Positions 7,588-56,008 are shown, counted from the first letter of the stretch. The stretch: 64,000 nucleotides of DNA from IMGVR_UViG_3300047095_000752:124001-188000, one strand, 5' to 3'. Program-made: numbers and translations. Notes: generated by a model not told the origin, from the sequence alone.

Positions 7588-7962
7588 TTAATCGTCTTCA
7601 TGTTTTTGAGCAGCTATAACTCTATTTTGTGCAACTTGAATATTTCTTAAATATCCAAAACATACTCTACGTTCGTCAGGATCCATTATATCATCACAGC
7701 CGTGCTTGATCCATCTCTTACGCTTAACCTTATCTACAAGCTCTCTAGCAAGCATCCCACCCCCTGCAATAGCCGCTCCCATGGCAGCATACTTAATCCC
7801 AGTATTTAATTTACTTGAAACTTCTCTTGTAGCTTCTTTTGGATCTAAGTACCCAGCTTCCGCTAAATATTTATATTCTGCTACAGTTAAATTAGACATG
7901 GCTTCTTGGATTAAAGCATCTAATCTTTCTTGTAGTTTCAATAATCTTTGTATGTCATTCAT
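7588..7962 (-). CDS. Leader-bearing small virion-type protein, class A
   Basis: MNDIQRLL..ERLDALIQEA..LTVAEY..LAEAG leader; GAAIAGGG segment; GCxxIxDPxERxxC. Confidence 0.7.
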   Translation of the reverse strand: MNDIQRLLKLQERLDALIQEAMSNLTVAEYKYLAEAGYLDPKEATREVSSKLNTGIKYAAMGAAIAGGGMLARELVDKVKRKRWIKHGCDDIMDPDERRVCFGYLRNIQVAQNRVIAAQKHEDD

Positions 7963-7977
7963 AATACAATTTCCTTA

Positions 7978-8247
7978 CTATCTTTTTAATAATGGAGGTC
8001 CGGTTGGTAACTGATTTTTAAGTCTTTGTTGATGTCTTTCTTCTACTGCTTTTTGTTTCTTTTCAATCTCTTTTTCAAATTGATATATAATTTGTTTACG
8101 TCTTAAATCTCTATCTCGAATAGCTTTACGTGTAGCAGCAATTGAAGCACCCGCCATAAGACCAGCACCAATTCCCGCTGCAGCTTTAAGTCCGGCTTTA
8201 ACTCCGGATTCAATTAATTTATTTTTAGCATTAGTTAAAATACTCAT
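7978..8247 (-). CDS. Leader-bearing small protein, class B
   Basis: MSILTN...LIE leader; Ala/Gly hydrophobic segment; basic tail. Confidence 0.7.
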   Translation of the reverse strand: MSILTNAKNKLIESGVKAGLKAAAGIGAGLMAGASIAATRKAIRDRDLRRKQIIYQFEKEIEKKQKAVEERHQQRLKNQLPTGPPLLKR

Positions 8248-8251
8248 TTAA

Positions 8252-8668
8252 TTAACCCTTATTCAGATATGAATCGACCATATCCTTACCACGATTTGCT
8301 AAGCCTTTAGCACGGTCGACCACATCTTGTGTAAAGGTTGTCTTTCTTGTACTCTTCATCCAGTTTATACACTGTTTATATTCCGGTGTATTTCTTCCAT
8401 ATTTTCTATGGCATGTATTGTATATACCGCTTAGGTCGGCATTTCGATTCATTAACTTTGTATCTTGTCTATCATCATACCTCCCCTTAGCCCACCCACC
8501 AGCCATTAAAGTAGGTACGACGGCTGCAGTGCCCTTCCAGAATTTTTTAGTTTTTGCTAAATCTATACCAGATCTGACCAGTTGTCCGGCGTGTCTACCA
8601 ATAGTTCCGGCTAGACCTTCATTTAAAAATTCTTCTAAATTTTTATTCGAATTATTTAAAATACTCAT
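8252..8668 (-). CDS. Leader-bearing small protein, class B
   Basis: MSILNNS...FLNE; CHRKYG...YKQC. Confidence 0.7.
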   Translation of the reverse strand: MSILNNSNKNLEEFLNEGLAGTIGRHAGQLVRSGIDLAKTKKFWKGTAAVVPTLMAGGWAKGRYDDRQDTKLMNRNADLSGIYNTCHRKYGRNTPEYKQCINWMKSTRKTTFTQDVVDRAKGLANRGKDMVDSYLNKG

Positions 8669-8688
8669 ATTATCAATACCTTTATTTA

Positions 8689-9216
8689 TTACTTATTGTC
8701 ATAATACATAAAAGAGCTATCACTACCTAACGCAGCCGCCCCTACATTTAGAGCGCCATTTATAGTGGCTAATCTAGCGAACTTTTTTAGTTGTTGATTT
8801 CTGTACTGTCTCTTCGCTTCTTCCTTCTCTGCTTTCAGTCTTGCTAATTCTTTATCCTTAGCACCATTTCGGATTTTATCTTCAACTCTGTCGATCTTTC
8901 TCTTTAAATCTCCAGATCCTTTTTGAACATAGGCGGCGGCAACACATCGGTTATATGATCTAGTTCCCTTTTCACCAACTGCTAAACAGTCAATAATTGG
9001 ATTTCTAATTTTTCCATCTTTACCACCGGCTTTGTTTAGGCGCATTTTATCACCAATTTTATTTCTAGCTACATTACCAGCACCAAGTCCGGTAATGACA
9101 CCTGCTGTAAGTGCTTTATTATTTTTAACTGCGTTTAAAGCCGTACCAATTGATTTACTTAATACACTTTCTTTTAACAATTGTAGTTCATGATTAGATT
9201 TATTCAAAATGCTCAT
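8689..9216 (-). CDS. Leader-bearing small protein, class B
   Basis: MSILNKS...LLKE; C-x13-C motif. Confidence 0.7.
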   Translation of the reverse strand: MSILNKSNHELQLLKESVLSKSIGTALNAVKNNKALTAGVITGLGAGNVARNKIGDKMRLNKAGGKDGKIRNPIIDCLAVGEKGTRSYNRCVAAAYVQKGSGDLKRKIDRVEDKIRNGAKDKELARLKAEKEEAKRQYRNQQLKKFARLATINGALNVGAAALGSDSSFMYYDNK

Positions 9217-9229
9217 AATATAGATCCCT

Positions 9230-9622
9230 TTATTTTTCGATTAAATTATTTATTTTTGATTTCAACTGATCTTTATACGCCAGACTTTTATTATAAGCAA
9301 ATCTACCTCGATCTGTTACGTCATTTGCGATATTGTATTTTGGGTTCAGTTTAAATTTATCAACACACGATTTGTACTTTGGTGTACCAGATCCATATCT
9401 ATTGGAACATGCTGTGTATATACCATTTGACTTAGCGTCCTTATTTAGTTTTCTTGTTTTTCGGGTTAAAATATGATTTGCAAGGATAGCGTCGATAGAT
9501 ATAGCTGATGCTAAATTTTTTCGTCTGTATTTATAGAAGGTTGCTGCGGCTTTTCTAGCCATAGATCCTTTAGATTCATAAAAGAAATTTAATTTTTTTA
9601 TAGATTCAGTTAAAATACTCAT
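9230..9622 (-). CDS. Leader-bearing small protein, class B
   Basis: MSILTES...FFYE; CSNRYG...YKSC. Confidence 0.7.
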   Translation of the reverse strand: MSILTESIKKLNFFYESKGSMARKAAATFYKYRRKNLASAISIDAILANHILTRKTRKLNKDAKSNGIYTACSNRYGSGTPKYKSCVDKFKLNPKYNIANDVTDRGRFAYNKSLAYKDQLKSKINNLIEK

Positions 9623-10425
9623 TAGTCTAAACTCGGTTTATATAGCTTTTCATTTATTTTATCGCCTATTTTGTCTTTAAGGCTTCGTGCTCGATTTGCA
9701 ATTGAATTTGGATCTATACCATATCTCTTATTTAATTTATCGACACATTTTGAATGTGATTTGCTTCCATCTTTATACACTTTAGAGCAAGCTACTTTTG
9801 GGTCTTTACCGCCAAATCTTACTGTTAATGAGTTCATAGCCGCATTTGAGGCAAGACCTGCACCGGCAGCCCCACCCGTGAACACTGCTGTATCTCTTAA
9901 TTCCTTTATACCTCGATTGTTCTTATATTTTTTGGCAGCATTTATATGTTTATTGAATTGAATGTCATCCATGGTACCTCGGAGTCCATCTCTCAGACTA
10001 CCTATGTCTTTGTCTACTAAATCACGAAACGCCTGACGATCTGTCTTATTTTTAGGATCTAATTTTTTTAACTTTTCTATTTTTCCGATGGCCATGTCGC
10101 GGTCATATTTCATATCAAAATTTTTGACTTGTTCTGGGATTTTAGCTTTTCTTGAAACAACATTATAAAAATTAATTTTATTATTATATCGGCGAGAGGC
10201 ACGACTGGCACGCTTAACTTTTGCAGCATCTATTGCGACTTTATTAAATTTGGAGGAAAGAAAGCTATTAATTCTATTCTTGGCTCGGTTTAGAGTCAGA
10301 GGTTTTTTATTCTTCTTTACTATATTCCCTGCTGCCTTAGCTGCGTCAATAACATCAGTATAATCTACATCAACTAGGTTCGCCAATTGCTTACCTACAG
10401 CCGTTTTAAAAGTTTCATTAATCAT
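9622..10425 (-). CDS. Basic protein of the same family (minimal MINE leader)
   Basis: GGAAGAGLA segment; CSKVYK...HSKC. Confidence 0.65.
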   Translation of the reverse strand: MINETFKTAVGKQLANLVDVDYTDVIDAAKAAGNIVKKNKKPLTLNRAKNRINSFLSSKFNKVAIDAAKVKRASRASRRYNNKINFYNVVSRKAKIPEQVKNFDMKYDRDMAIGKIEKLKKLDPKNKTDRQAFRDLVDKDIGSLRDGLRGTMDDIQFNKHINAAKKYKNNRGIKELRDTAVFTGGAAGAGLASNAAMNSLTVRFGGKDPKVACSKVYKDGSKSHSKCVDKLNKRYGIDPNSIANRARSLKDKIGDKINEKLYKPSLD

Positions 10426-10481
10426 TTTATTTTCCTTTTAGTAATTATATTCTATGATAAGATATATATTAATATTTAAGT

Positions 10482-11129
10482 CTACTGTATTCCTAATCTT
10501 TCTTTAAGCTTTTGTAGTCTGGTCTTCGGCGCTGGCTTTGGTTGGAGAGCACGATTTACGGCATATCCACCACCAGCGGCGGCTGCACCACCGGCTGCTA
10601 TACCAGCACCAATCTTAGCTTGTCTACGCGCTTGTGCTACGGCGGACTGTGATGCTGTAAGTGCGGGAGCGGCTTCGTCGGCAGCTTTTAAAGATAGAGC
10701 GGATCGTGCGTCTCTGGACTTATTTTTCCAATTACGTTTTGCCCACGGTCCAACTACTTCAGCATAAGTATTGGCACCACTGGCTTCACGTGAAGCCTTT
10801 TTAATATCTTTAAGCCTCATACCACCCGGCTTGGTACCGAATTGTTTTATCTTTTCACCTTTTTCAATTGCCGCCTTTAGGGTACTTTGATTCTTTTTAT
10901 CACCCATCACATTAACGCCGAATCGTCTTACAGCCTGTCCGGCGCGAGTACCAACAGCAGCCTTACCAAGTCCTACTATAGTATCATATCCGGTTTTAAA
11001 CTTATTTTCAGTTAAAATACCAGCTTCATGTAACTGTACAAATTCACTTACGGTCAATTCGTTCGTGGCTTCTTCAATTAAACTTGCTAACTGTTCTCTC
11101 ATTTCTAACATTTCTAATAATTCGTTCAT
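10482..11129 (-). CDS. Leader-bearing small protein, class A
   Basis: MNELLEMLE...LTVSEF..LHEAGILTE; IGAGIAAGGAAAAGGG. Confidence 0.75.
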   Translation of the reverse strand: MNELLEMLEMREQLASLIEEATNELTVSEFVQLHEAGILTENKFKTGYDTIVGLGKAAVGTRAGQAVRRFGVNVMGDKKNQSTLKAAIEKGEKIKQFGTKPGGMRLKDIKKASREASGANTYAEVVGPWAKRNWKNKSRDARSALSLKAADEAAPALTASQSAVAQARRQAKIGAGIAAGGAAAAGGGYAVNRALQPKPAPKTRLQKLKERLGIQ

Positions 11130-11134
11130 TTTAT

Positions 11135-12010
11135 TTAACCTTTCTTAGCATTTTGTAATGCGATAAATACCATCTTCTCGTAAAGACCTTTATTGATCTT
11201 TCTAAAGAATGATGAAAAAACGGAACTACCCGACACTGATGATGCGACCAATGTTGCAAATAATCTCGATCCATCTTCATAAGCTGGTAGACTTGATAAC
11301 CCAGAGCTATTAATAATAGTCTGTGAAAATAAATTTTCGGAAATAGGAATAATATTATTTTTTCTAAGTGCTGTTAAAAATCCAATCATAGATGATAAAT
11401 CAAAATTCAAATTCAATTCTGATGCTGATTGTGCATAATATCTATTTGCAAGTTTATTTATAACACCTTGATTTATATCTCCGCCCATAATACCAGAATG
11501 AACATACAATCCAATTAACACTTGTAGGTTAGGAATCAAATATTTATACGAGCCTTGAAGACCATGTTTCTTAGAATAAAATTTCATGAATGCGGATATG
11601 TAGAAATTTGCGATATGAATGTCAATATCTTTTTCGAATGGCTTACGTTTAATATAAGATTGTAAAGTTATAGCGTAAAGGAACATGGAATAAATATCAG
11701 GAGAACTATAATCAGATACATACTGACTAGGTAATACAGATAGATTTACAACAGGTATAAAGTCACGAGTTACAAAGCCGGGTAGAGGATATTCGGGCAT
11801 TCTAACTACAAGGCATTTATCCATATTTTCGATCACATATGAACCACCACCATGTGCTCTAGCATAACCTTTGGTTAATACTTTAATATGGTGGTTATCA
11901 TCAGCATCTACTTCGAATGCCTTGATTGTATTAGCGGCTACCGGTGATATGTTATATACTTGGTGTCCACTTTTATCTTTGATTAATTCAAAAGATTCTT
12001 TAATTCTCAT
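11135..12010 (-). CDS. Hypothetical protein (virion region)
   Basis: 291-aa ORF with RBS. Confidence 0.65.
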   Translation of the reverse strand: MRIKESFELIKDKSGHQVYNISPVAANTIKAFEVDADDNHHIKVLTKGYARAHGGGSYVIENMDKCLVVRMPEYPLPGFVTRDFIPVVNLSVLPSQYVSDYSSPDIYSMFLYAITLQSYIKRKPFEKDIDIHIANFYISAFMKFYSKKHGLQGSYKYLIPNLQVLIGLYVHSGIMGGDINQGVINKLANRYYAQSASELNLNFDLSSMIGFLTALRKNNIIPISENLFSQTIINSSGLSSLPAYEDGSRLFATLVASSVSGSSVFSSFFRKINKGLYEKMVFIALQNAKKG

Positions 12011-12070
12011 TTTATATGTTCCTTAGATCAAATTAATTCATAATAGAATTTTATAATATTACTAAATTAT

Positions 12071-12562
12071 TTATTCCCAATAGTCATCGGGAACGTTCTT
12101 TTTTGGTACTCTTCTCGACATGTGTCTATTTATATCATCTTGAAAACTACTGTATATATCCAACTTCTTTCGGGTGCTTCTGGGTTTCGTACTACGGGCA
12201 CCGTGTATCATATTATCATCAAGATTTTTATGAATTAGTCCTTGAATTTTTTCTTTTCTTAGATGTGCTGGTGTAGATCTTAATTCATCTTTCATATCTC
12301 TAAATTTATTGGCGGACATTCCCCACCGTTTATATGTTTTTACTACATCCTCAGCTTGCTCTTCCGGTGTCGTAAAGAAATTCGCAGCCAAACGCCGACT
12401 CGTCGCTTGAGGGGTACGTTTTAGCTGTTCCCGGTTTGAGGACTTTGCAAATTTAATAAGATCTGATGGCGTTCCAGATTTTGATGCCTTCTTTAAAATC
12501 TTTTTTAATATACCTTCTTTAAATAATTGAAGGGTATTTTCGGATTCTGTTAATATACTCAT
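12071..12562 (-). CDS. Leader-bearing basic protein, class B
   Basis: MSILTES...LFKE. Confidence 0.7.
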   Translation of the reverse strand: MSILTESENTLQLFKEGILKKILKKASKSGTPSDLIKFAKSSNREQLKRTPQATSRRLAANFFTTPEEQAEDVVKTYKRWGMSANKFRDMKDELRSTPAHLRKEKIQGLIHKNLDDNMIHGARSTKPRSTRKKLDIYSSFQDDINRHMSRRVPKKNVPDDYWE

Positions 12563-12566
12563 TATA

Positions 12567-13220
12567 CTATCCTTTAGATGTAATAGATTTAATCTTAGCT
12601 TTAATTCTGTTAATTGGCTTTGCAGCTTCTGCGGCTTTAGCCATCATTTGTTGGTTGCGTTCATTACGATTTTGATTGGACTTCTTAACGCCAGCCCCTA
12701 CAACTGTACCACCAACTGCTGTCGCTCCCGCGTGTGTAGCTAATGTTTTTCTAGATTGATTTACATTCTTTTTAATTCTACGTAGTTTACCGGCCGCGAT
12801 ATATTTATCGGCTTCAGGTCCGGACATCTGAGAAAAATGTTTAGTTTCACTCTGGTCAATACCAGCAGCCTTCATGCTACGATCTGCTTTAGCGATTTTA
12901 CGCTTCAACTGGGCTTGCTTGAGTTTATCTCCACCCATTACATTTTTTGCGAATTTGGTGGTGACTCTTTTTGTATCTTTACCAAACCCAATAGCTTTTT
13001 GACCTGTCTTTGAGGCGGCAACTTTTTGACCAAAACTAGAACCAGCAATACGCTTGCTTAATTTTGATAAAGCTCCAATACCATTCTTAATATTAAGTTC
13101 GTTTAGTACACCACTTTCGGTTAACATTTGAACTTCATTCATAGTAAGATTATCAACGGATTCTTCAATCAATTGATCTAATTTCTTCTTCATTTCTAAC
13201 ATTTCTAATAAGTCGTTCAT
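12567..13220 (-). CDS. Leader-bearing small protein, class A
   Basis: MNDLLEMLE...LTMNEV..LTESGVLNE; shares NVMGxxK with 10482..11129. Confidence 0.75.
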   Translation of the reverse strand: MNDLLEMLEMKKKLDQLIEESVDNLTMNEVQMLTESGVLNELNIKNGIGALSKLSKRIAGSSFGQKVAASKTGQKAIGFGKDTKRVTTKFAKNVMGGDKLKQAQLKRKIAKADRSMKAAGIDQSETKHFSQMSGPEADKYIAAGKLRRIKKNVNQSRKTLATHAGATAVGGTVVGAGVKKSNQNRNERNQQMMAKAAEAAKPINRIKAKIKSITSKG

Positions 13221-13265
13221 AGTATAAATTCTCCTTGTTATTTATTATATATTTGTCGAAACTTT

Positions 13266-13367
13266 TTATAGAGCGAATGAATTAACAAACGCAATAATTA
13301 AAGTTACTACATCATTAATAAAACTATTTAACAGTACTTCTAATTGGCTTAATAATAAATCAAACAT
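13266..13367 (-). CDS. 33-aa hydrophobic peptide (below the ORF track cut-off)
   Basis: MFDLLLSQLEVLLNSFINDVVTLIIAFVNSFAL*; AAGGA RBS. Confidence 0.55.
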   Translation of the reverse strand: MFDLLLSQLEVLLNSFINDVVTLIIAFVNSFAL

Positions 13368-13533
13368 GTTTTTTATCCTTTTTGGGTTGGGTTTGGTTGA
13401 GTTTAAGTGAGTATTTTATATTTAATCTTATAAACCTAATAAATTATTACGTTTATATGACATTTTAGATTTGCGACTTCCTTCTTGTTCGTATTTGATA
13501 TATGTTACTTTGTCGATGGTACCTCCCCGTCAG

Positions 13534-14073: not shown

Positions 14074-14099
14074 CTTATATTAAATATATACTATTATAA

Positions 14100-14438
14100 T
14101 TAATATTTGCCGCGCCGGGTCGATGGAGATGATAACGTATCACCTTTCGGTCCAGCCCACAAATCTTTACAAGCCCAATATGCGGCAGAAAATCTATCTT
14201 TCTGCTGATCACATTTATGTCTTGCTCTAAATGACTTTCTTGCTACGTCACTGTAGTTGTGACCATATCCCGTAGCGCCATAATGAATTAACTTCTCACG
14301 ACCACCTTCACAGACCTTGACCATTTTCTTCTTACCGGGTCTGGTTGAATTCATTGGTTTATTACAGGGCATTTTACTTTTATCGCTATTTTCTTTTAAT
14401 ATTGATTCTAAAAATAATTTACAGTCGCGTATTAACAT
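14100..14438 (-). CDS. Small basic protein with KSFRARHxC...AAYW motif (widespread in large viruses)
   Basis: PGKKKMV...IHYG..GY...RKSFRARHKC...SAAYWAC. Confidence 0.6.
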   Translation of the reverse strand: MLIRDCKLFLESILKENSDKSKMPCNKPMNSTRPGKKKMVKVCEGGREKLIHYGATGYGHNYSDVARKSFRARHKCDQQKDRFSAAYWACKDLWAGPKGDTLSSPSTRRGKY

Positions 14439-15356: not shown

Positions 15357-15671
15357 TTATACGTTGGAAATTTTTGACTTACAATAATTAAGCATTTTAG
15401 GATCATTCTTGTATCTAAAATTGCACAACGCCAATTTACCTTTATTTACTATACTTGATATCCCCGTAGGTTGTACATTTAACATTTTTGTAGTTTTAAC
15501 CGGAGTTGCTTTTGGGTTGTATGGCATTTTTGTATATTTTGGAGTTGCTTCGCCTCGTTTACCTAACATATTAGTTATAAAGGATTCTGATAAACCTAAT
15601 TTATTTATTTTCTTGTTTATTAGATTGTCTAATTCTTGCTTAGCTTCTAATAATTCTAATATATCATTCAT
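15357..15671 (-). CDS. Leader-bearing small protein, class A (short)
   Basis: MNDILELLEAKQELD...LSE; CNFRYK...NYC. Confidence 0.7.
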   Translation of the reverse strand: MNDILELLEAKQELDNLINKKINKLGLSESFITNMLGKRGEATPKYTKMPYNPKATPVKTTKMLNVQPTGISSIVNKGKLALCNFRYKNDPKMLNYCKSKISNV

Positions 15672-15691: not shown

Positions 15692-16234
15692 CTAACTATA
15701 TATAATATCATCGACTTTAGTTTTGATTTTTTCTCTAATTTTTTGTAGTTCTGGTTTATTTGCTTCAGCTTTTGCGGCGGCAGAATCTCTTCTTTTATTT
15801 TGAATTGATTTTCCTGCAATGGCTGCGGGCACGGAAGATGTACCGATTACCTTGGCTGCTCGTTCGAGTCCAATATCTTTACGAACCGCTTTTTTATTCC
15901 AATTTAACATAGCACGCATATAATCTAGATTTTTCATCCCCTCAAACCCCTCTTCGGGATCTAAGTCTATTCCATACCCATCTAAAGTTTTGACTCTTTT
16001 ATTTAATTTTTGAGCTAATTCAGCGGGTTTTGGTTTTAGAAATCCGGTTGAAACTCCAATTTTACGAATTAATTTTTTAGTATTAATTATATTATCTTTA
16101 GTTATCTTAATTTCGGTTAAAATACCATTTTCTTGTAAATAATTAAATTCGTTTACCGTAAGATCCCGAACAGCTTCTTGAATTAATTCATCGAGTTTTT
16201 CTTTGGTTTGCAACATTTCTAATAGATCATTCAT
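15692..16234 (-). CDS. Leader-bearing small protein, class A
   Basis: MNDLLEMLQ...LTVNEF..LQENGILTE. Confidence 0.75.
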   Translation of the reverse strand: MNDLLEMLQTKEKLDELIQEAVRDLTVNEFNYLQENGILTEIKITKDNIINTKKLIRKIGVSTGFLKPKPAELAQKLNKRVKTLDGYGIDLDPEEGFEGMKNLDYMRAMLNWNKKAVRKDIGLERAAKVIGTSSVPAAIAGKSIQNKRRDSAAAKAEANKPELQKIREKIKTKVDDIIYS

Positions 16235-16315: not shown

Positions 16316-16909
16316 TTACATTCTATCTTTTACAATATCTTTTAGCTTGGTTAATTTTCCGGCTTTTGCGGCAGCATAAAGTTTTTGAGCGCATGCCTTT
16401 ACTTCTTCAGGCTTTGAATATCTAGATTTACACGCAGTTACAGCATTACCGGTTTCTTTGTACACAGATAGCATACTACGATTTTTAACCTTATTGTTTG
16501 CGAATTGACCGGTCTTATACGCGGCGGTACCAGCCGCTGCAGTAGTTGCTAGTCTAACGGGGCGTTCAGTTGCTTTAACTATGCCCTTCTGATTTTTATA
16601 TGCATTTCTAAACATATCTTTCATTACGGCAGGCGCAATTACCTTTCCGAGTGCGTCCTTTTGTGAACGCGCCGCCTGTTTAGCGACTCTATTTACCATT
16701 TGAACTCGTTCTGCTGGAGTCATTTTTAAAATTCCAGTTGCAGTCCCAACACGCCGTAAAATTTTTGATAAAGGTTTCGTCGCAGCTTCATTCAGTACGC
16801 CAGATTCTTGAAGTGTCTGGAATTCACCTACAGTAAGTTCACCTACAGCTTCTTGGATCAGATTGTCAAGATCCTGCTGCATCTCTAAAAGTTCGATTAA
16901 TTCATTCAT
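16316..16909 (-). CDS. Leader-bearing small protein, class A
   Basis: MNELIELLE...LTVGEF..LQESGVLNE; CKSRY...KAC. Confidence 0.75.
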   Translation of the reverse strand: MNELIELLEMQQDLDNLIQEAVGELTVGEFQTLQESGVLNEAATKPLSKILRRVGTATGILKMTPAERVQMVNRVAKQAARSQKDALGKVIAPAVMKDMFRNAYKNQKGIVKATERPVRLATTAAAGTAAYKTGQFANNKVKNRSMLSVYKETGNAVTACKSRYSKPEEVKACAQKLYAAAKAGKLTKLKDIVKDRM

Positions 16910-16978: not shown

Positions 16979-17515
16979 TTACCCTATATATCTATTAGCT
17001 TTATCTTTGGCTTTATCAAATATAGATTTATTTTTTAAAATCTCAGCTTCTTTTTTCTTTTTCAATTGATCGTGCTTAAGTTTACCATAAACTCCAAGAG
17101 TCACACCAACCCCAGCCGTTGTATAAGGGCGAGCTTTCATATTCTTGGGTAAATCTTTTATATTTTTCTTACCAGTTTTAATAGAATCTATAACTTCAGC
17201 TTTAATATCACCTTTAAATTTAGCTATATCAGCGGCATCTTTACCTTTTAATAAGGTATGTCTTTTGTCAATAGCATCATCAATGGCGTTAATAACAAAT
17301 CGGGTGGCTTTAGTTCCGGTCTGTAATACCTTCTTAGATACATTTCGGTTCGCGGATTTAGCATATGTACCGGCGAGCTTAAGTCCGGTCATTCCAAACT
17401 TAGCTAAATTTTCATTTAATATATTGAATTCATTGACAGTTAAATTGTTGATATGATTCTCGATTAACATATCAACTTCTTGTTTTGCTTCTAATAATTC
17501 TAATAAGTTATTCAT
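16979..17515 (-). CDS. Leader-bearing small protein, class A (start 17515)
   Basis: MNNLLELLEAKQE...LTVNEF..LNE; AAGGA RBS. Confidence 0.75.
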   Translation of the reverse strand: MNNLLELLEAKQEVDMLIENHINNLTVNEFNILNENLAKFGMTGLKLAGTYAKSANRNVSKKVLQTGTKATRFVINAIDDAIDKRHTLLKGKDAADIAKFKGDIKAEVIDSIKTGKKNIKDLPKNMKARPYTTAGVGVTLGVYGKLKHDQLKKKKEAEILKNKSIFDKAKDKANRYIG

Positions 17516-18765: not shown

Positions 18766-18996
18766 CTACCTTTTCTTCTTTCTTAACTTTTCTTTCATTT
18801 TGTACATATACATGTCGCATTTAAAGCGTTCATTTGGATCGTCGATGCTAGTACAACCATTCTTAATCCAACCGGCTCTCTTCTTACTACGAGTGAGATA
18901 TTCAATACCACCAATAGCAGATATAGTGGCAAGACCAATACTAACTAGGGCTTGATCGCTAATTTCTTTTAAAAATTGTTTATGTAAATAATTCAT
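18766..18996 (-). CDS. Leader-bearing small protein, class C
   Basis: MNYLHK..LKE; hydrophobic segment; WIKNGCTSIDDPNERFKC, shared with 7588..7962. Confidence 0.65.
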   Translation of the reverse strand: MNYLHKQFLKEISDQALVSIGLATISAIGGIEYLTRSKKRAGWIKNGCTSIDDPNERFKCDMYMYKMKEKLRKKKR

Positions 18997-19002: not shown

Positions 19003-19788
19003 TTATCCAGTAATCGAATCGATTGTTTGTCTTATCTTAGAAGTCTTATACTTAGCATATAATCTATTTTGACACTTTTTAATGTCTTCTGGTGAATTAT
19101 ATGATTGTTTACATGCCTTTACAGCATTTTGTAGTTTCTCATATGTGTATTCACTTTGTTTCGTCTTTAGTGCTTTGTTTGCGGTGATTGCCGTAGCTCC
19201 GGCACCGGTTGCTAATCCACCACTAACAACATTGTCAATCATATCAATTTTTCGTAATTTCTTTGCACGTTCGGCTGCGGTGCCACGTAAATTATTAAGC
19301 TTATCACCTACACCCTTTGTAGATGTATTAAAATTATTTACAATCGTATCCATACCTGCCTGACGGCGTTTTAATAGATCTTCTGCGTCTTTAGCCTTAC
19401 TTAATATGGCAGCTTCGGTCTCTTTCCACTTGGCTTTTTGCTGAGCGGATGCATTAGGCTTGCGAGCAGGGGACTTTGCCCATCTACGTTCAAGTTCGTC
19501 TTGTACGGCTTTAATATCCTGTTGTGGACCTACGCTGCGCTTCTGAATAGCGTCGAGTGCGCTTTCAACCTTAGCTTTTTTAGCAACTTGAGTTTTACGA
19601 ATACCAATAGAGGGCTTGAGTAAATCACCATATCTATCTTTAAGTTTAGTAAAGTCGATGTGTCCCTTTTTCATAGATGCTAGTTTATTTGGTACGTATC
19701 TTATTACTTTACCTAAATTTTCTAATGTCTTAGATTTAGCACCCTCTTCGAGGATAGCTTCAATTAACGCTTTGTGTTGGTAATTCAT
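19003..19788 (-). CDS. Leader-bearing basic protein, class C
   Basis: MNYQHK...ILEE; GGLATGAGA; CKQSY...KKC. Confidence 0.7.
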   Translation of the reverse strand: MNYQHKALIEAILEEGAKSKTLENLGKVIRYVPNKLASMKKGHIDFTKLKDRYGDLLKPSIGIRKTQVAKKAKVESALDAIQKRSVGPQQDIKAVQDELERRWAKSPARKPNASAQQKAKWKETEAAILSKAKDAEDLLKRRQAGMDTIVNNFNTSTKGVGDKLNNLRGTAAERAKKLRKIDMIDNVVSGGLATGAGATAITANKALKTKQSEYTYEKLQNAVKACKQSYNSPEDIKKCQNRLYAKYKTSKIRQTIDSITG

Positions 19789-51952: not shown

Positions 51953-52339
51953 ATGTTAACAGAATCTCAGATTACAATGCTTAAAAAGCAAAAAGAATTT
52001 TCTATATTCAACACTCCAATCCTCAATTCTTTTTTTGGATTTTGGTTATATATTATTAAAAAGATTATATTCGCGTGCACTTCAGTAAAAGTATGGGCAT
52101 TAGTAGGATTCAGTTGGATCAACGCATGGCTCTTGGTACAGGGGTATCTCGAATCATCCGGTTTCGCTGCGATCCAGATCTCCTTAATTACAACCACATT
52201 AGTTGCCCGCGAATTTTCTAAAAGTGCAAATAATTCTATAGTTGAAAAAATTCAAAATATGCCTATTGTAGAAAAGTTGACCGAAGCTGCAGGATTTGGA
52301 ACTCAAGATAAAACTCTAGGGACTGAACTGGAAGATTAA
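51953..52339 (+). CDS. Multi-pass membrane protein, holin candidate
   Basis: 2-3 hydrophobic segments; S.K.W motif; charged C-terminus. Confidence 0.55.
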   Translation: MLTESQITMLKKQKEFSIFNTPILNSFFGFWLYIIKKIIFACTSVKVWALVGFSWINAWLLVQGYLESSGFAAIQISLITTTLVAREFSKSANNSIVEKIQNMPIVEKLTEAAGFGTQDKTLGTELED

Positions 52340-52343: not shown

Positions 52344-53267
52344 ATGCCTAAAATAATAACACATAACGAAGTGTTTGAATATTACAAAAAAGAAGGTTAT
52401 GTTTTAGAATCTATATATAGAGGCTGTAAGTATAAAGACGAACTTATTTGCCCAGAAGGTCATAAGATTGAAATGACTTTTAATAACTTTAAAAGTTATG
52501 GTAAAAAGACGGGTAAAAGATGTGGTGAATGTTTCGGAACTGAAAAATATTCGCAAGAATATGTATTCAATTATTATAAAAAATATGGATATACACTAAG
52601 ATCTATCTATAAAAACAATCACACTAAAGACGAGTTAACATGCCCGGATAATCACAAAGTTGACATGTTATTTGATAATTTCAAAAATAAAGGCAGTCGT
52701 TGTGTAAAATGTTCCGGTGTTGAAAAATTTACTCAAGAATATGTATTTAATTATTATAAGAATGAAGGATATACATTAACAAGCATTTATAATGGGTGCG
52801 AGTCTAAAGATGAATTGATATGCCCCGAAGGTCACAAGATAGATATGCTTTTCAATAACTTCAAAAATAAAGATAGTAGATGTAAAGAATGTTATATAGA
52901 AAATAATAGGGGTGAAAACCATCCAAACTTTAACCCAAATAGAGAAGAACTTTTATTAAATCATAGATTAAGAACAAGTAAAAAGAATCCATGGATTAAA
53001 AAACATATGAAAGATGACCCAAATTATAACAATTGGATATTAGACTCAAAGCAATTTGTAGTAGATCATATAATACCGGTAAAGTTATTTTGTAAATTAT
53101 ATAATGAATATAATTTAGATGAATATAAACTTAGAAAAGCAATTAATAAAATAGACAATCTACAATTATTAACAATAGAACAAAATTCAAATAAACACGC
53201 CAAAGGTTGTATAAATGAAGCCAAGGAATATTTAATTAAAAACAATATACAATTAATCAACACATAA
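52344..53267 (+). CDS. Zinc-finger-repeat HNH homing endonuclease (3 repeats)
   Basis: Three CPxxH repeats; DHIIP...NKIDNLQLL...NSNK. Confidence 0.8.
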   Translation: MPKIITHNEVFEYYKKEGYVLESIYRGCKYKDELICPEGHKIEMTFNNFKSYGKKTGKRCGECFGTEKYSQEYVFNYYKKYGYTLRSIYKNNHTKDELTCPDNHKVDMLFDNFKNKGSRCVKCSGVEKFTQEYVFNYYKNEGYTLTSIYNGCESKDELICPEGHKIDMLFNNFKNKDSRCKECYIENNRGENHPNFNPNREELLLNHRLRTSKKNPWIKKHMKDDPNYNNWILDSKQFVVDHIIPVKLFCKLYNEYNLDEYKLRKAINKIDNLQLLTIEQNSNKHAKGCINEAKEYLIKNNIQLINT

Positions 53268-53278: not shown

Positions 53279-53749
53279 ATGGATGAATTAGAACAAATCC
53301 CCGTAGATGAAGTAGTCCAACAAGGAGTAGATGGTGGTGCAAGCTTTGACGGTATATTTGATGGTATAATGGGATTAGCTGGCAGTAGCGGTATGGTCGG
53401 CGTTGTAATTGTAGCCGTACTCGGACTTATAGCTTTCCTAAAATTTGGTAAAAAGACTAAACAATTAAATAAGATTCAAAAAGAAGATGTTAAAGTATAT
53501 AAAGAAAATAAAAAAGAGTCTTTAAAAGAAATTAAACAAATAGATAAAAAAGCAGAAGATATTATAAACAAAATTGTAAAGAATAGCGAAGAAGAAGATG
53601 ACATTGAAATGGAAATTGCAACGGGTATAATTGACGTTGTAGATGAAATTGAAGAGATAAAGAAAGATCCAACCCGCCGGACCATACCTTCCGCTAATGA
53701 ACGACTGAGAATCGCCCTACAAAAGGCGAAAGAACGTAGAGGACACTAA
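53279..53749 (+). CDS. TM + coiled-coil protein, i-spanin-like
   Basis: Single TM followed by a charged coiled coil; upstream of a lipoprotein gene. Confidence 0.5.
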   Translation: MDELEQIPVDEVVQQGVDGGASFDGIFDGIMGLAGSSGMVGVVIVAVLGLIAFLKFGKKTKQLNKIQKEDVKVYKENKKESLKEIKQIDKKAEDIINKIVKNSEEEDDIEMEIATGIIDVVDEIEEIKKDPTRRTIPSANERLRIALQKAKERRGH

Positions 53750-53751
53750 TT

Positions 53752-54306
53752 ATGTACAAGCACACAATACTTTTAATTACAATTATGGTTGCACTTATGG
53801 GTTGTGCTTCCGATGGACAGGATGCTTTAGAAACGTACAAGTCACCTGAGATTACCTTTGAACCCACTTTAGAATATTCTCTAGACACTTCAAAGCTAGA
53901 CGATCTACATGAAGAGACTTTGAGTGGTTTACTCGATGCTCCTATTTATGCGAATATCACCGATGATGGTACTATGAGTTTAACTTTTGATGATACTGAG
54001 GCGAACGCCGTCTTACTTTACAGTGAAGATTATAGTAAGATCGCTGATCTTGCAGAAATCACCGAAGGTTATAGAAATATTGTTATGAGTCAAGTCGAAC
54101 TAATTAAGGTTAAGGATTCTACGATTCAAGCTTTACAACAATTAGTATTACTCCAGCAAAGTTCGAAAGAGATCTACAAGGAAAATTTCGTATTGGCGGA
54201 CAAGCTGTATAGGGCTGAACATAAGCTTAGGATGCGAGAAAAGGTATACGGAGAGATCAGGTTTTTTAGCACAATACTTGGCATTATAGCTGTTGGTGTT
54301 ATTTAA
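53752..54306 (+). CDS. Lipoprotein with C-terminal TM, spanin-like
   Basis: Signal peptide with lipobox LMGC; C-terminal FFSTILGIIAVGVI. Confidence 0.6.
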   Translation: MYKHTILLITIMVALMGCASDGQDALETYKSPEITFEPTLEYSLDTSKLDDLHEETLSGLLDAPIYANITDDGTMSLTFDDTEANAVLLYSEDYSKIADLAEITEGYRNIVMSQVELIKVKDSTIQALQQLVLLQQSSKEIYKENFVLADKLYRAEHKLRMREKVYGEIRFFSTILGIIAVGVI

Positions 54307-55073
54307 TGTCTCATAATAAATTACCATATGAAGAAGTTTATAAGGTCTTTAAAGATCAAGGCTGCGAATTATTAGGAAGAGAATACATTAATAAAAAAAC
54401 TTTAATGAAATATAGATGTAAGTGTGGTATTGAAGGTAAGATACGATTAAATAATTTTAAAGATGGTCAACGATGTCAAACGTGCCGATGTGATAGAAAA
54501 TCTAAATATGAAGACGCCTATAAGTGTTTCAAAGATCAAGGTTGCGAATTATTAGAAAATGAATATACATATATATCATCTAAATCTAAACTTAAATACA
54601 AATGTGAATGTGGTTTTCCCAGTATAATACGATTAGATGCTTTTAAGGGCGGGTCTCGATGTAAAGAATGTCAAAGATCAAATAGGATAGGTGAAAAAAA
54701 TTCAAATTATAAAACAGATAGGACACGAAAGCGGCGCGGAGATTTATTAAAATTTGACTACAAACATGAAATTATATTAAGTGATGATCCAATGTATAAC
54801 TTATATATAGCATCTAAACAAATATTCACACAAACAAAAAAATCTAAATATGGAGCTAAGCCTAAATATTCTATCGATCATATACAACCAAGAATTGCCT
54901 TTATCGATAATGATCTAGATAATATTCATGGTACAAAAATAATTAAGAAGATCTGTAACCTTCGTGAAAATCTTAGAATAATCCCAAAAGAAGAAAATGG
55001 ATCTAAAGGCGGCAAATACATCCAAGAAGAATTCATGGCTTGGTTCAATGATAAAATAAAGGAGTATGAATAA
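54306..55073 (+). CDS. Zinc-finger-repeat HNH homing endonuclease (2 CxCG-type repeats)
   Basis: FKDQGCELL..EY...KY.C.CG repeats; DHIQPR...ICNLRENLRI. Confidence 0.8.
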   Translation: MSHNKLPYEEVYKVFKDQGCELLGREYINKKTLMKYRCKCGIEGKIRLNNFKDGQRCQTCRCDRKSKYEDAYKCFKDQGCELLENEYTYISSKSKLKYKCECGFPSIIRLDAFKGGSRCKECQRSNRIGEKNSNYKTDRTRKRRGDLLKFDYKHEIILSDDPMYNLYIASKQIFTQTKKSKYGAKPKYSIDHIQPRIAFIDNDLDNIHGTKIIKKICNLRENLRIIPKEENGSKGGKYIQEEFMAWFNDKIKEYE

Positions 55074-55207
55074 TGGGTAGCATTGAAGTTCTAAAGAATA
55101 TAGTCTCAAAACAAGCAAATATAGATAATGAGGTTGATCCTAAACTTCTACCCAAAGAAAAAGGGTGTGGATGTCAGCATAAGAAGCTTATAATGACAGA
55201 AAAGTAA
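55073..55207 (+). CDS. 44-aa peptide with GCGC motif (not in the ORF track)
   Basis: MGSIEVLKNIVSKQANIDNEVDPKLLPKEKGCGCQHKKLIMTEK*; AAGGAG RBS. Confidence 0.45.
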   Translation: MGSIEVLKNIVSKQANIDNEVDPKLLPKEKGCGCQHKKLIMTEK

Positions 55208-55239
55208 GGGACAAATTTAAAATAAATAGGAATTATATT

Positions 55240-55647
55240 ATGAACTCTGTGTGTAAGAAAGTTATATACGAAAAATATATTGTGAATGAATTTAGTCTGA
55301 CCGGTGCTATGCAAGGCGCAGAAAATTTCATTTCGAAGAATAGTAATGTCATCGGTCTTGGAATGCCAGCCGTTGGTGCGGGACTCTCCATGGCAATTTC
55401 GGCAAAAGACGCTATACAGCGTAAGATGATGGAACACAAGTGGAAGCGTAAAGGATGTGACCAAGAGATCAACCCTCAGCTAAAACAGCAATGCGAAGTT
55501 CGCCAAAGAAATATGCTTATAGCATCAATCGGAAAAGAAAAGGGTCGCTGCAGAGGAGCCAAAGATCCACAAGCATGTATGGCTCAAATTGATCAAAGAA
55601 TCAGTACCCTACGTGGACAGAACGCTCAAGAGTACTCAGGAGAATAA
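55240..55647 (+). CDS. Leader-bearing small protein (outlier of the array family)
   Basis: ..IVNE leader; GLGMPAVGAGL; GC...C and C..AKDPQAC; GGACAAAT upstream. Confidence 0.65.
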   Translation: MNSVCKKVIYEKYIVNEFSLTGAMQGAENFISKNSNVIGLGMPAVGAGLSMAISAKDAIQRKMMEHKWKRKGCDQEINPQLKQQCEVRQRNMLIASIGKEKGRCRGAKDPQACMAQIDQRISTLRGQNAQEYSGE

Positions 55648-55648
55648 T

Positions 55649-56008
55649 ATGCTTCATCATCACAAACAACGTATCTCGGAGAGTCTTGCCGTTGTCGGTG
55701 GAATGGCTGCAGCGGCTGCTATGGGTGCTTTAGCCGCTAAGGGTCTCTCGTCCTTCCGTAGCCGTTACATGTCCTGTAAATCGATTGAGGACCCCTACCA
55801 GAGAGATATGTGTACTGTTCGTATCCTTGACTCAATGATTGAGAATATGATGGAACTTCGTGGTAGTTGTGATAATACAGCAGACCCCGCCGCCTGTAAA
55901 TTAGAATTAGCTTATAAGATCGATAAGTTAACCGCGAAGAAAGCCAGACTCCAACAGGGTGTAAACCGTAAGCACCGCGCAAGAATAATTGATAGAGAAA
56001 CGAGTTAA
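55649..56008 (+). CDS. Leader-bearing small protein (start 55649)
   Basis: MLHHHKQRISE; VGGMAAAAAMGALAA; CKSIEDPYQRDMC; CDNTADPAAC. Confidence 0.65.
   Translation: MLHHHKQRISESLAVVGGMAAAAAMGALAAKGLSSFRSRYMSCKSIEDPYQRDMCTVRILDSMIENMMELRGSCDNTADPAACKLELAYKIDKLTAKKARLQQGVNRKHRARIIDRETS

What the first reader, a model, noticed from the sequence alone, without database searches (positions are those of the whole stretch)
7588..56008. Shared two-cysteine mini-module shuffled across different leader classes
Seen: a C-x(11-13)-C module follows the hydrophobic segment regardless of leader class. One subtype is CxxxY...C (CHRKYGRNTPEYKQC, CSNRYGSGTPKYKSC, CSKVYKDGSKSHSKC, CNFRYKNDPKMLNYC, CKSRYSKPEEVKAC, CKQSYNSPEDIKKC). 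The other is CxxIxDPxxRxxC (GCDDIMDPDERRVC in class A 7962, GCTSIDDPNERFKC in class C 18996, CKSIEDPYQRDMC in 55649). Leader, body and Cys module therefore reassort independently. Inference: a disulfide-stapled helical hairpin, suggesting an oxidising (virion or periplasmic) destination, with combinatorial diversification by recombination.
Basis: partly seen in the sequence, partly recalled or inferred. Interest (0 to 1): 0.65.

Follow-up and report, generated by a model that had tools for sequence, protein, structure and literature searches.

The report
Mosaic leader-and-cysteine proteins of a lake jumbo phage
An uncultivated freshwater jumbo phage carries a fast-changing tandem array of small basic proteins assembled from interchangeable N-terminal leaders, variable bodies and a cysteine-pair helical tail, most likely proteins loaded into the phage head and ejected into the host; one cysteine module belongs to a large, unnamed phage domain family.

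Summary
All nine quoted peptides are present. In the 15-gene array at 7588-19788 (minus strand), 9 proteins have exactly two Cys spaced 11-13 residues apart, and 6 have none.

The leaders form three unalignable classes, A, B and C. The Cys modules form groups 1a, 1b and 2. Classes A and C each occur with both 1b and 2, so at least one recombination or fusion is needed. Class B occurs only with 1a.

- "Type 2" is a shortened form of a conserved C-terminal domain: a Gly/Ala-rich helix, a basic linker, then C-x10/11-C-x18/22-C-x4/5/8-C.
- A whole-library profile search found 171 cluster representatives. None matches Pfam, PHROG or a GenBank phage.
- AlphaFold predicts three helices with one Cys pair at each turn.
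- Across the family, Cys are kept or lost only as pairs.

The window lies in a 245-kb lake-water phage with a T4-type portal and a gp21-type prohead protease. Every leader ends in hydrophobic-x-Glu, the T4 protease motif. Related strains differ by whole cassette genes.

Best reading: the leaders are capsid-targeting propeptides on packaged, ejected proteins, comparable to T4 internal proteins and phiKZ inner-body paralogs. This is a new variant of a known kind. Cleavage, packaging and disulfide formation are inferred, not shown.

The parts
7588..7962 (-). Class A leader (about 35-41 aa), Gly/Ala helix, basic linker, type-2 Cys pair (residues 89 and 101; nt 7660-7698). A two-Cys short form of the 4-Cys domain.
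   Evidence: Orthologues are 85-96% identical.
7978..8247 (-). Class B leader, Gly/Ala helix, basic tail, no Cys.
   Evidence: 91% identical orthologue in L002.
8252..8668 (-). Class B leader, type-1a Cys pair (residues 86 and 100; nt 8369-8413).
   Evidence: Absent from L002. In other strains an extra gene is inserted at its 5' end.
8689..9216 (-). Class B leader, C-x13-C pair (residues 77 and 91; nt 8944-8988), second Gly/Ala segment near the C-terminus.
   Evidence: Absent from L002.
9230..9622 (-). Class B leader, type-1a Cys pair (residues 72 and 86; nt 9365-9409).
9622..10425 (-). No class A/B/C leader. Long basic body, Gly/Ala segment, type-1a Cys pair (residues 213 and 227; nt 9745-9789).
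   Evidence: Absent from L002.
10482..11129 (-). Class A leader, basic body, Gly/Ala helix, basic tail, no Cys.
   Evidence: 67% identical orthologue in L002. Missing between the 291-aa and 89-aa genes in L003.
12071..12562 (-). Class B leader, basic body, no Cys, no hydrophobic segment.
12567..13220 (-). Class A leader, basic body, Gly/Ala helix, no Cys.
15357..15671 (-). Class A leader (diverged), orphan C-x13-C pair (residues 83 and 97; nt 15381-15425).
   Evidence: Absent from L002.
15692..16234 (-). Class A leader, body homologous to 12567 over its whole length, no Cys.
   Evidence: Absent from L002.
16316..16909 (-). Class A leader, replaceable body, type-1b Cys pair (residues 160 and 173; nt 16391-16432). 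Its C-terminal 71 aa are homologous to those of class C gene 19003.
16979..17515 (-). Class A leader (true start at 17515, behind its own ribosome-binding site), basic body, no Cys.
18766..18996 (-). Class C leader (11 aa), TM-strength helix, basic linker, type-2 Cys pair (residues 48 and 60; nt 18817-18855). This 76-aa two-Cys short form is also seen in distant phages (P0064).
19003..19788 (-). Class C leader, long basic body, Gly/Ala helix, type-1b Cys pair (residues 226 and 239; nt 19072-19113).
55240..55647 (+). Other leader (ends V-N-E at residue 17), TM-strength helix, full 4-Cys domain (pairs at nt 55456-55494 and 55549-55578).
55649..56008 (+). Class-C-like leader (ends I-S-E at residue 11), TM-strength helix, full 4-Cys domain (pairs at nt 55775-55813 and 55868-55897). 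This was the AlphaFold target.
6640..7578 (-). Context: baseplate hub/spike-like protein directly downstream of the array, followed by an amidase at 6107-6688.
   Evidence: phrog_9992, E 6e-6; Amidase_2, weak.

Best explanation
The array at 7588-19788 is a rapidly turning-over family of small, strongly basic proteins of an uncultivated freshwater jumbo myophage. Each protein has up to four pieces.

(1) An N-terminal leader of class A (about 41 aa), B (13-17 aa) or C (11-15 aa). It most likely works like the capsid-targeting sequence of T4 internal proteins: it docks the protein into the assembling prohead core and is then cut off after a hydrophobic-x-Glu site by the phage's own T4 gp21-type prohead protease.
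(2) A Lys/Ala-rich body that diverges or is replaced quickly.
(3) A Gly/Ala-rich, weakly hydrophobic helix.
(4) A basic helical tail. In 9 array members it carries a Cys pair on either side of a Pro-containing turn.

The 'type 2' pair is the first half of a widespread C-terminal domain: helix, basic linker, then C-x10/11-C-x18/22-C-x4/5/8-C. That domain folds as three helices with one Cys pair at each turn. Several unrelated proteins of this phage and of many uncultured phages carry it.

I infer that the mature proteins travel inside the head with the DNA and are ejected at infection. I further infer that the Cys pairs close as intramolecular disulfide staples once the particle leaves the reducing cytoplasm, and that the latent hydrophobic helix lets the ejected protein associate with the host membrane.

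Shown here: the modules, their mosaic distribution, the breadth of the family, the predicted helices, the pairwise keep-or-lose pattern of the Cys, the cassette gain and loss between strains, and the protease and portal genes.

Inferred only: cleavage, packaging, ejection, disulfide formation and membrane insertion.
For: Genome context. The window lies in a 245,225-bp virus record. The record has a Peptidase_S77 (T4 gp21) prohead protease at genome 240325-241083 (65 bits, above cut-off) and a T4-type portal at 236814-238928.

Leaders.
- Every leader ends in hydrophobic-x-Glu, the T4 gp21 motif L/I-X-E. T4 capsid-targeting sequences are N-terminal propeptides of 10-19 residues (PMC9026906).
- In orthologues of 16316 identity is 37-40 of 41 up to L-N-E, then collapses.
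- Leader DNA is only 50-68% identical and third codon positions have drifted. Conservation is therefore at the protein level, not recent gene conversion.
- Among the 4-Cys family hits, 79% have a hydrophobic-x-Glu in residues 4-30, against 42% of this genome's ORFs. Recurrent leader types end in I/L-x-E followed by Gly, Ala or Ser.

Composition and turnover.
- The proteins are strongly basic, like T4 internal proteins.
- Flanking structural genes are 86-97% identical to those in L002, while array genes are 43-94% identical and six are absent there.
- Other strains carry two extra cassette genes.

The 4-Cys domain.
- 171 representatives at E<=1e-3. The domain is C-terminal in 135 of 149.
- AlphaFold: pLDDT above 90 for residues 35-119; helices 21-44, 49-76 and 80-118; Cys at 43, 55, 74 and 83.
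- Cys states across the family: CCCC 145, CCxx 7, xxCC 1. None has one Cys of a pair alone, apart from one row cut at the domain edge.

Precedents. SPN3US paralogs gp53 and gp54 share identical 15-residue N-termini on diverged bodies, and its ejection protein gp47 has a predicted TM helix (PMC5694885). The phiKZ inner-body locus encodes paralogous, proteolysed, injected proteins that associate with membrane-derived vesicles (bioRxiv 10.1101/2024.03.24.586471).
Against: - There is no direct evidence that any of these proteins is in the virion or is cleaved.
- The major capsid protein was not found, and the record is only about 78% complete.
- The array sits next to baseplate-type genes, not the head genes.
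- L/I-x-E is not significantly avoided in the mature parts: 6 observed against 10.8 expected, P=0.07. An apparent family-wide avoidance vanished once the conserved I-x-D-P motif was excluded.
- The basic cluster right after the helix fits an N-out/C-in membrane topology. That would put the Cys domain in the reducing cytoplasm.
- The first Cys pair is not symmetric about its turn in the model (2 residues before, 7 after), so its disulfide is less certain than that of the second pair.
- The type-1 model is poor (pLDDT 56).
- The protease-with-leader co-fold gave no verdict.
Confidence: 0.42

Rival explanations
1. Tail-lumen or baseplate-hub cargo, resembling tape-measure or pilot proteins. The proteins are loaded into the tail tube or hub rather than the head, and are released into the periplasm on contraction to breach or line the membrane. 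The leaders are assembly or chaperone-docking helices, not protease substrates.
For: - The array lies directly upstream of a hub/spike-like gene and an amidase. It is interleaved with a gene giving weak baseplate-wedge/sheath PHROG hits.
- The Atlas shape search lists phage tail protein and lambda-type tape-measure C-terminal clusters among the nearest shapes, with TM by query 0.62-0.67.
- From general knowledge, tape measures often carry Gly-rich hydrophobic segments.
Against: - No tape-measure Pfam or PHROG family hits any member.
- The shape matches are generic helical hairpins.
- Other carriers of the same domain sit at three other loci, away from tail genes.
- The leader boundary coincides with the protease motif.
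Confidence: 0.2
2. Inner-membrane proteins of the infected cell, such as lysis regulators, spanin-like proteins or superinfection-exclusion factors. They insert N-out/C-in, and the Cys domain stays cytoplasmic and reduced.
For: - 55240 and 55649 follow a TM/coiled-coil gene (53279) and a lipobox-plus-C-terminal-TM gene (53752). The same order recurs in the unrelated contig L009.
- Their helices reach TM strength, 1.6 or more.
- The 15 residues before Cys1 carry a mean net charge of +2.7, which fits the positive-inside rule.
Against: - Many carriers have 200-550 residues before the helix and no signal peptide.
- Most array members have helices too weak for a stable TM.
- Strong overall basicity and conserved cleavable-looking leaders are not features of holins or spanins.
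- Tandem arrays of 15-17 paralogs are unusual for lysis genes.
Confidence: 0.15
3. The Cys pairs are not intramolecular staples. They either cross-link subunits through intermolecular disulfides or form a metal site shared between two chains.
For: - The first pair is asymmetric about its turn in the model.
- The Cys are invariant across a family whose mean column identity is 14%.
- From general knowledge, lambda Rz/Rz1 spanins use intermolecular disulfides.
Against: - C55 and C74 lie 19 residues apart on one continuous helix, so one chain cannot build a four-Cys site.
- There are no CxxC knuckles or conserved His.
- Two-Cys forms persist under conservation.
Confidence: 0.15
4. The pattern is a chance or annotation artefact in non-coding or mis-called ORFs.
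For: None found.
Against: Ribosome-binding sites, orthologues in independent metagenomes, 171 family representatives and the statistics.
Confidence: 0.01

Closest known systems
T4 internal proteins IPI/IPII/IPIII and Alt with their capsid-targeting sequence (CTS)
   Same: Small basic proteins. A short conserved N-terminal propeptide ends in L/I-x-E on otherwise unrelated bodies. A gp21-family protease is encoded in the same genome. The loci vary between related phages (PMC9026906, PMC3012670).
   Different: There are three or more leader classes instead of one, and class A is about 41 residues long. Here 15-17 genes sit in tandem. There is a C-terminal Gly/Ala helix plus a Cys-pair tail that T4 IPs lack. 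No sequence similarity to T4 IPs was found (PHROG/Pfam blank). Packaging and cleavage are untested here.
phiKZ inner-body locus paralogs (gp92-97, PF12699) and SPN3US ejection-protein paralogs gp53/gp54
   Same: A tandem locus of paralogous internal head proteins in jumbo phages that also encode multisubunit RNA polymerase. They are proteolysed after Glu, injected and membrane-associated after injection. SPN3US paralogs share identical N-termini on diverged bodies (PMC5694885; bioRxiv 10.1101/2024.03.24.586471).
   Different: PF12699 is absent from these proteins and from the whole genome. The motif here has a hydrophobic residue at P3, like T4, rather than Ser/Ala/Gly. The Cys modules are not described for those proteins.
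Ejection proteins of P22 (gp7, gp16, gp20) and T7 (gp14-16) that form a trans-envelope conduit
   Same: The proposed working principle: proteins stored in the particle that become membrane-associated after ejection (PMC8402733 abstract).
   Different: No homology. Those proteins are not known to carry removable leaders or Cys staples. This is an analogy only.
Twin Cx9C (CHCH) disulfide-stapled helical hairpins
   Same: Helix-turn-helix held by Cys pairs. This is recalled from general knowledge.
   Different: The spacing here is C-x10/11-C and C-x4/5/8-C. Each pair brackets a turn, rather than two pairs bridging two helices. Not a member.
Phage tape measure proteins
   Same: Helical, with Gly-rich hydrophobic segments and gene position next to hub genes. 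There are shape-level Atlas neighbours.
   Different: No family hit. The proteins are far too short individually. The domain also occurs away from tail genes.

Membership tests
T4-type CTS-bearing internal head proteins | Short N-terminal propeptide ending at an L/I-x-E cleavage site | tested here: met
   At sequence level only. Classes B and C end in a hydrophobic residue (L, I or F)-x-E at residues 11-17. Class A ends at residue 35-41 and has several internal sites. The conservation boundary coincides with L-N-E in 16316 orthologues.
T4-type CTS-bearing internal head proteins | A gp21-family prohead protease in the same phage | tested here: met
   Peptidase_S77 hit of 65 bits, above cut-off, at genome 240382-240849, next to a T4-type portal.
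T4-type CTS-bearing internal head proteins | Physically packaged in the head, cleaved there and ejected with the DNA | not testable with these tools
   Needs virion proteomics. The co-fold of protease with leader gave no verdict.
T4-type CTS-bearing internal head proteins | Small, basic, non-conserved bodies at variable loci | tested here: met
   K+R far exceeds D+E in all members. Bodies are replaced between orthologues. Genes are gained and lost between strains.
phiKZ-like internal head proteins (Pfam PF12699) | Match to the phiKZ_IP profile | tested here: not met
   No hit in ten members at E<=1, and none anywhere in the genome.
Twin Cx9C / CHCH hairpin | Two Cx9C motifs on antiparallel helices | tested here: not met
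   Spacings are 10-11 and 4/5/8, with 18 or 22 between the pairs.
Zn(Cys)4 ribbon or knuckle | Four ligands, usually two CxxC knuckles, converging on one site | tested here: not met
   No CxxC. C55 and C74 are 19 residues apart on one predicted helix. Two-Cys forms are conserved.
Tape measure proteins | Match to TMP families, with length scaled to the tail | tested here: not met
   No PHROG or Pfam TMP hit for any array or 4-Cys member. There are only generic shape neighbours.
Spanin / holin lysis proteins | Defined membrane topology (i-spanin: N-in, C-out, periplasmic coiled coil) and place in a lysis cassette | tested here: inconclusive
   55240 and 55649 lie after lysis-like genes, and the synteny recurs in L009. 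However, the charge distribution predicts the opposite topology, and most members lack a TM-strength helix.
New 4-Cys C-terminal domain family (defined here) | Gly/Ala-rich helix, basic linker, then C-x10/11-C-x18/22-C-x4/5/8-C at the C-terminus | tested here: met
   Full form: 55240, 55649, and genome 89834-90796 and 88400-89827. First half only: 7588 and 18766. A further carrier at genome 229198-229692 matches the profile, but its Cys pattern was not checked in full. Type-1 modules align in register, but hhalign probability is 1.6%, so their membership is inconclusive.

The most novel reading that the evidence does not exclude
Freshwater jumbo phages may run a natural plug-and-play protein-delivery system. 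Three independent cassettes recombine to diversify what is injected with the DNA: a protease-removable capsid-targeting leader, a hypervariable basic body, and a previously undescribed disulfide-stapled, latent membrane-anchor domain. The 4-Cys domain would then be the shared device that takes ejected cargo to the host membrane.
Probability: 0.25. Interest if true: 0.72.

Novelty: new variant of a known kind. Interest (0 to 1): 0.55.

Why it matters
If the reading is right, this array is a clear sequence-level example outside T4 and phiKZ of interchangeable targeting leaders on diversifying injected proteins. It would also define an unnamed domain family: 171 cluster representatives with no Pfam, PHROG, PDB or cultured-phage match.

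The predictions are easy to test:
- cleavage after defined Glu residues;
- C1-C2 and C3-C4 disulfides;
- membrane association after ejection.

The leaders could serve as handles for packaging foreign proteins, as the T4 capsid-targeting sequence already does. The gene-by-gene differences between near-identical lake strains point to an arms-race locus.

If the reading is wrong, the domain family and the mosaic architecture still stand as unexplained, conserved features of uncultured jumbo phages.

Tried and rejected
Family and similarity searches that found nothing:
- PHROG and Pfam scans of array members, of 117 domain members and of long carriers.
- Megablast and tblastn against GenBank phages.
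- IMG/VR locus searches with the conserved 291-aa neighbour and with a domain alignment.
- Protein Atlas feature search.
- Foldseek against PDB and BFVD: no match at E<=1e-3, only generic helical hairpins.
- tRNA and Rfam scans of the window.

Searches with limited reach or weak results:
- The word-based homologue searches see only proteins of 0.55-1.75 times the query length. They found only close orthologues for 16316, 7588 and 9230.
- The Atlas shape search gave non-specific neighbours.
- hhalign of type 1 against type 2 aligned the Cys in register but was not significant.
- AlphaFold of the type-1 module had low confidence.

Tests that gave no verdict or were dropped:
- Complex prediction of the prohead protease with the class A leader: no verdict. 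This counts neither for nor against binding.
- Test for avoidance of L/I-x-E in mature regions. In the window it is weak (6 against 10.8, P=0.07). A strong family-wide Glu-versus-Asp bias at +2 (p=4e-6) proved to come from the conserved I-x-D-P motif of the domain itself. It vanished in the bodies alone (p=0.2), so I dropped it.
- A possible link of the 475/546-aa carriers to the RNA polymerase beta subunit. One weak PHROG hit was not reproduced in 12 homologues or against PDB.
- No T4 late-promoter motif recurs upstream of the array genes.
- The major capsid protein (PF07068) and the sheath (PF04984) were not found.

Full report
WHAT THE WINDOW IS

The 64-kb window is bases 124001-188000 of a single 245,225-bp virus record. 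The record is linear, has 35% G+C, and CheckV rates it 78% complete.

- It encodes a family-B DNA polymerase about 29% identical to those of T4-like cyanophages and vibriophages.
- It has a T4-type portal at genome 236814-238928.
- It has a T4 gp21-type prohead protease (Peptidase_S77, 65 bits) at genome 240325-241083.
- Related contigs carry pieces of a multisubunit RNA polymerase beta-prime next to the same genes.
- The DNA occurs in lake-water metagenomes from 24 studies.
- No GenBank phage matches it at the DNA level.

I read it as an uncultivated freshwater jumbo myophage with mixed T4-like and phiKZ-like features.

CHECKING THE OBSERVATION

Between 7588 and 19788, all on the minus strand, lie 15 small genes. 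Each has its own AAGGA-type ribosome-binding site. Their N-termini fall into three classes that cannot be aligned with each other:

- Class A: 7588, 10482, 12567, 15357, 15692, 16316, 16979.
- Class B: 7978, 8252, 8689, 9230, 12071.
- Class C: 18766, 19003.
- 9622 has none of the three.

These leaders occur nowhere else in the genome.

Nine of the fifteen proteins have exactly two Cys, 11-13 residues apart, and the other six have none. Given two Cys per protein the joint chance of that spacing is about 1e-13. The chance that all members have 0 or 2 Cys is 4e-5. The paralogs share ancestry, so I read these figures as evidence of selection.

The 'hydrophobic segment' is Gly/Ala-rich and in most array members too weak for a stable membrane helix.

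ARE THE MODULES SHUFFLED?

Smith-Waterman z-scores against shuffles and BLAST group the Cys modules as follows:

- Type 2: 7588, 18766, 55240, 55649, and a gene at genome 89834-90796.
- Type 1b: 16316, 19003.
- Type 1a: 8252, 9230, 9622, 8689.
- 15357 stands alone.

The leader groups cut across the module groups. Class A carries type 2 (7588) and 1b (16316). Class C carries type 2 (18766) and 1b (19003). The shared pieces are significant:

- 16316 residues 123-193 against 19003 residues 189-259, E 2e-8.
- 18766 residues 39-68 against 7588 residues 80-109, E 4e-6.
- Class A leaders against each other, E 1e-5 to 1e-10.

All four combinations of two leaders with two modules cannot arise by duplication and divergence alone. 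At least one fusion or recombination is needed. The Mantel correlation of leader and module similarity is -0.05 (eight proteins, so low power). Class B occurs only with 1a, so that block is congruent.

The bodies move as well. Three orthologues of 16316 from other samples keep 37-40 of the 41 leader residues and about 60% of the Cys tail, but the roughly 100 residues between cannot be aligned.

Leader-coding DNA is only 50-68% identical between paralogs, and third codon positions have drifted. The leaders are therefore old and held by selection on the peptide, not homogenised by recent gene conversion.

THE LOCUS IS A HOT SPOT

In the syntenic contig L002 the flanking structural genes are 86-97% identical to the window, while array genes are 43-94% identical. 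Six array genes and two further genes (the HNH endonuclease at 17532-18062 and the 13534-14073 gene) are absent there. L003 lacks the 10482 gene.

A 98%-identical strain has two extra genes of 173 and 109 residues. They sit exactly where contigs from two other lake samples show insertions: 482 nt at 8668, with a 59-nt repeat of the leader, and 343 nt at 7977/7979. So near-identical strains differ by whole leader-bearing cassettes.

WHAT 'TYPE 2' REALLY IS

Aligning the type-2 carriers showed a larger unit:

- a Gly/Ala-rich helix;
- a basic linker ending in W/Y-x3-G;
- a first Cys pair, C-x11-C, with a central I-x-D-P;
- 18 residues;
- a second pair, C-x8-C, with a central D/N-P.

55240, 55649, genome 89834-90796 and the C-terminus of genome 88400-89827 have all four Cys. 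7588 and 18766 stop after the first pair. The local scan found a seventh carrier at genome 229198-229692, whose Cys pattern I did not check in full.

A profile search of 1.84 billion cluster representatives found 171 proteins at E<=1e-3, 28 of them at E<=1e-10, with lengths of 70-650 residues. The domain is C-terminal in 135 of 149. About 140 of the 149 have the pattern C-x10/11-C-x18/22-C-x4/5/8-C.

Nothing known matches the domain:

- Pfam and PHROG are blank.
- tblastn against GenBank phages finds nothing.
- Foldseek against PDB and BFVD finds nothing at E<=1e-3.

In other contigs several neighbouring genes carry the domain: three in L005, three in L009, two in L008.

STRUCTURE

With a 117-sequence alignment, AlphaFold models 55649 with pLDDT above 90 from residue 35 onward. 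It predicts three helices at 21-44, 49-76 and 80-118.

- C43 ends helix 1 and C55 lies in helix 2.
- C74 ends helix 2 and C83 lies in helix 3.
- Each pair therefore brackets one turn.

C55 and C74 are 19 residues apart on one helix, roughly 28 Å. One chain therefore cannot bring four Cys to a single metal site.

Across 154 aligned members the Cys states are CCCC 145, CCxx 7 and xxCC 1. One further row (xCCC) is cut at the domain edge. No member keeps half a pair. This is what two independent two-Cys units would give.

The second pair is symmetric about its turn (3 residues before, 4 after) and fits a hairpin staple well. The first pair is asymmetric (2 before, 7 after), so I am less sure of it. 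I could not read distances from the model.

For type 1, hhalign puts C...P...C in register with the first pair of type 2 but without significance. AlphaFold gives only a weak helix-loop-helix with pLDDT 56. Whether type 1 is homologous to type 2 remains open. Type 1a and 1b have only close orthologues within reach of the word search.

WHAT THE LEADERS ARE

Every leader ends in hydrophobic-x-Glu:

- Class B at residues 13-17.
- Class C at residues 11-15.
- Class A at residues 35-41, with several more such sites inside it.

T4 gp21 cuts after L/I-X-E. T4 internal proteins carry 10-19-residue N-terminal capsid-targeting sequences that are removed in this way, and related phages hang such leaders on diverse basic proteins (PMC9026906, PMC3012670). 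In SPN3US the diverged paralogs gp53 and gp54 share identical 15-residue N-termini, and extra sites inside long propeptides are thought to help clear them (PMC5694885).

The same logic appears in the 4-Cys family at large. Of the hits, 79% have such a site in residues 4-30, against 42% of this genome's ORFs. Recurrent leader types, one aromatic-acidic and one Lys-rich, end in I/L-x-E followed by Gly, Ala or Ser. One of these is on genome 89834-90796, and a class-C-like one is on many short carriers.

The phage encodes the matching protease. The proteins are strongly basic, as T4 internal proteins are.

MOST LIKELY MECHANISM

The leader docks the protein into the prohead core and the gp21-type protease removes it. 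The basic mature protein stays with the DNA and is ejected at infection. The Cys pairs oxidise to staples outside the reducing cytoplasm. The latent Gly/Ala helix mediates membrane association after ejection. This would resemble the injected inner-body paralogs of phiKZ, which end up with membrane-derived early vesicles (bioRxiv 10.1101/2024.03.24.586471).

Only the architecture, the distribution, the predicted fold and the gene context are shown. Cleavage, packaging, ejection, oxidation and membrane insertion are inferred. I put this composite at about 0.4.

RIVALS

(a) Tail-lumen or hub cargo. The array abuts a hub/spike-like gene and an amidase, and the shape neighbours include tape-measure C-termini. 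However, no tape-measure family matches, and the domain also sits at loci away from tail genes.

(b) Producer-cell membrane proteins. 55240 and 55649 follow lysis-like genes in a synteny that recurs in L009, and the basic linker fits N-out/C-in. However, long carriers have no signal peptide and most array helices are too weak for a stable membrane span.

(c) Intermolecular disulfides or an inter-subunit metal site. This is not excluded.

WHAT FAILED

- The co-fold of the protease with a class A leader gave no verdict.
- A test for avoidance of L/I-x-E in mature regions was weak in the window. Family-wide it proved to be an artefact of the domain's own I-x-D-P motif.
- A hint that the 475/546-aa carriers are RNA polymerase beta pieces was not reproduced.

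NOVELTY

Interchangeable targeting leaders on diversifying packaged proteins are known from T4 and from phiKZ-like phages. The phiKZ_IP family itself is absent here. What is new:

- the several leader classes in one array;
- the scale and turnover of the array;
- the Cys-pair tail;
- above all, the unnamed 4-Cys C-terminal domain family.

I rate it a new variant of a known kind.

OPERATORS' NOTES

Read laying was given 5,901 letters. Only genetic code 11 was used.

Noticed in passing
window 4054-4809, 5286-6059, 17532-18062, 28623-29624, 33424-34404, 48794-49798, 52344-53267, 54306-55073: Eight HNH-type homing-endonuclease paralogs. Most have repeated Cys-rich N-terminal units. The one at 17532-18062 sits inside the array and is absent from the syntenic contig L002. 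The one at 54306-55073 separates the lysis-like genes from the two 4-Cys genes.
   Followed up: partly
window 29625-31967 (-) and 34430-35206 (-): The family-B DNA polymerase is split into two genes. The larger one covers PHROG 262 profile positions 17-590 and the smaller covers 597-764. The C-terminal piece lies upstream of the N-terminal piece, with an HNH gene and small ORFs between. This resembles the split polymerases described for phiKZ-like phages.
   Followed up: partly
window 51953-52339, 53279-53749, 53752-54306: A possible lysis cassette: a multi-TM holin-like protein, an acidic protein with one strong TM helix plus a coiled coil, and a protein with a lipobox signal and a C-terminal TM helix (unimolecular-spanin-like). 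The last two, followed by 4-Cys genes, recur in the unrelated contig L009. None has a PHROG hit.
   Followed up: partly
window 14100-14438 (-): A 112-aa, five-Cys protein inside the array. It matches part of PHROG 220, 'minor head protein and DNA pilot' (E 1e-19), and is 89% conserved in L002.
   Followed up: no
genome 86724-90796 (locus L004), outside the window: A conserved trio: a 320-aa leader-bearing 4-Cys protein, a 475-aa protein with the 4-Cys domain at its end, and its 546-aa paralog without the domain. The same trio occurs in L005. The bodies have no known family.
   Followed up: partly
genome 121344-122834 and contigs L003, L005: Multisubunit RNA polymerase beta-prime fragments (Pfam PF00623, PF04998) lie a few kb from the array, in a phage that has a T4-type portal and protease. 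This is a mix of T4-like and phiKZ-like traits.
   Followed up: no
genome 242360-245225 (contig end): No long ORF in the last 2.9 kb after the protease and two roughly 210-aa genes. A T4-type major capsid protein (PF07068) and a sheath (PF04984) were not found anywhere. The record may be cut before them, or they may be too diverged.
   Followed up: no
window 13534-14073 (-): A 179-aa Trp/Gly/Pro-rich gene in a slightly G+C-richer stretch inside the array. In L002 only a 33-codon ORF stands in its place.
   Followed up: no
window 22100-24700: A stretch of short, overlapping, Cys- and aromatic-rich ORFs on both strands with no clear gene. It may be non-coding or badly diverged.
   Followed up: no
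window 7588-7962 (-), residues 42-50: After its class A leader, 7588 has a stretch that aligns with the class C leader of 18766. It looks as if a class A leader was added in front of a complete class-C-type gene. This is speculative.
   Followed up: no
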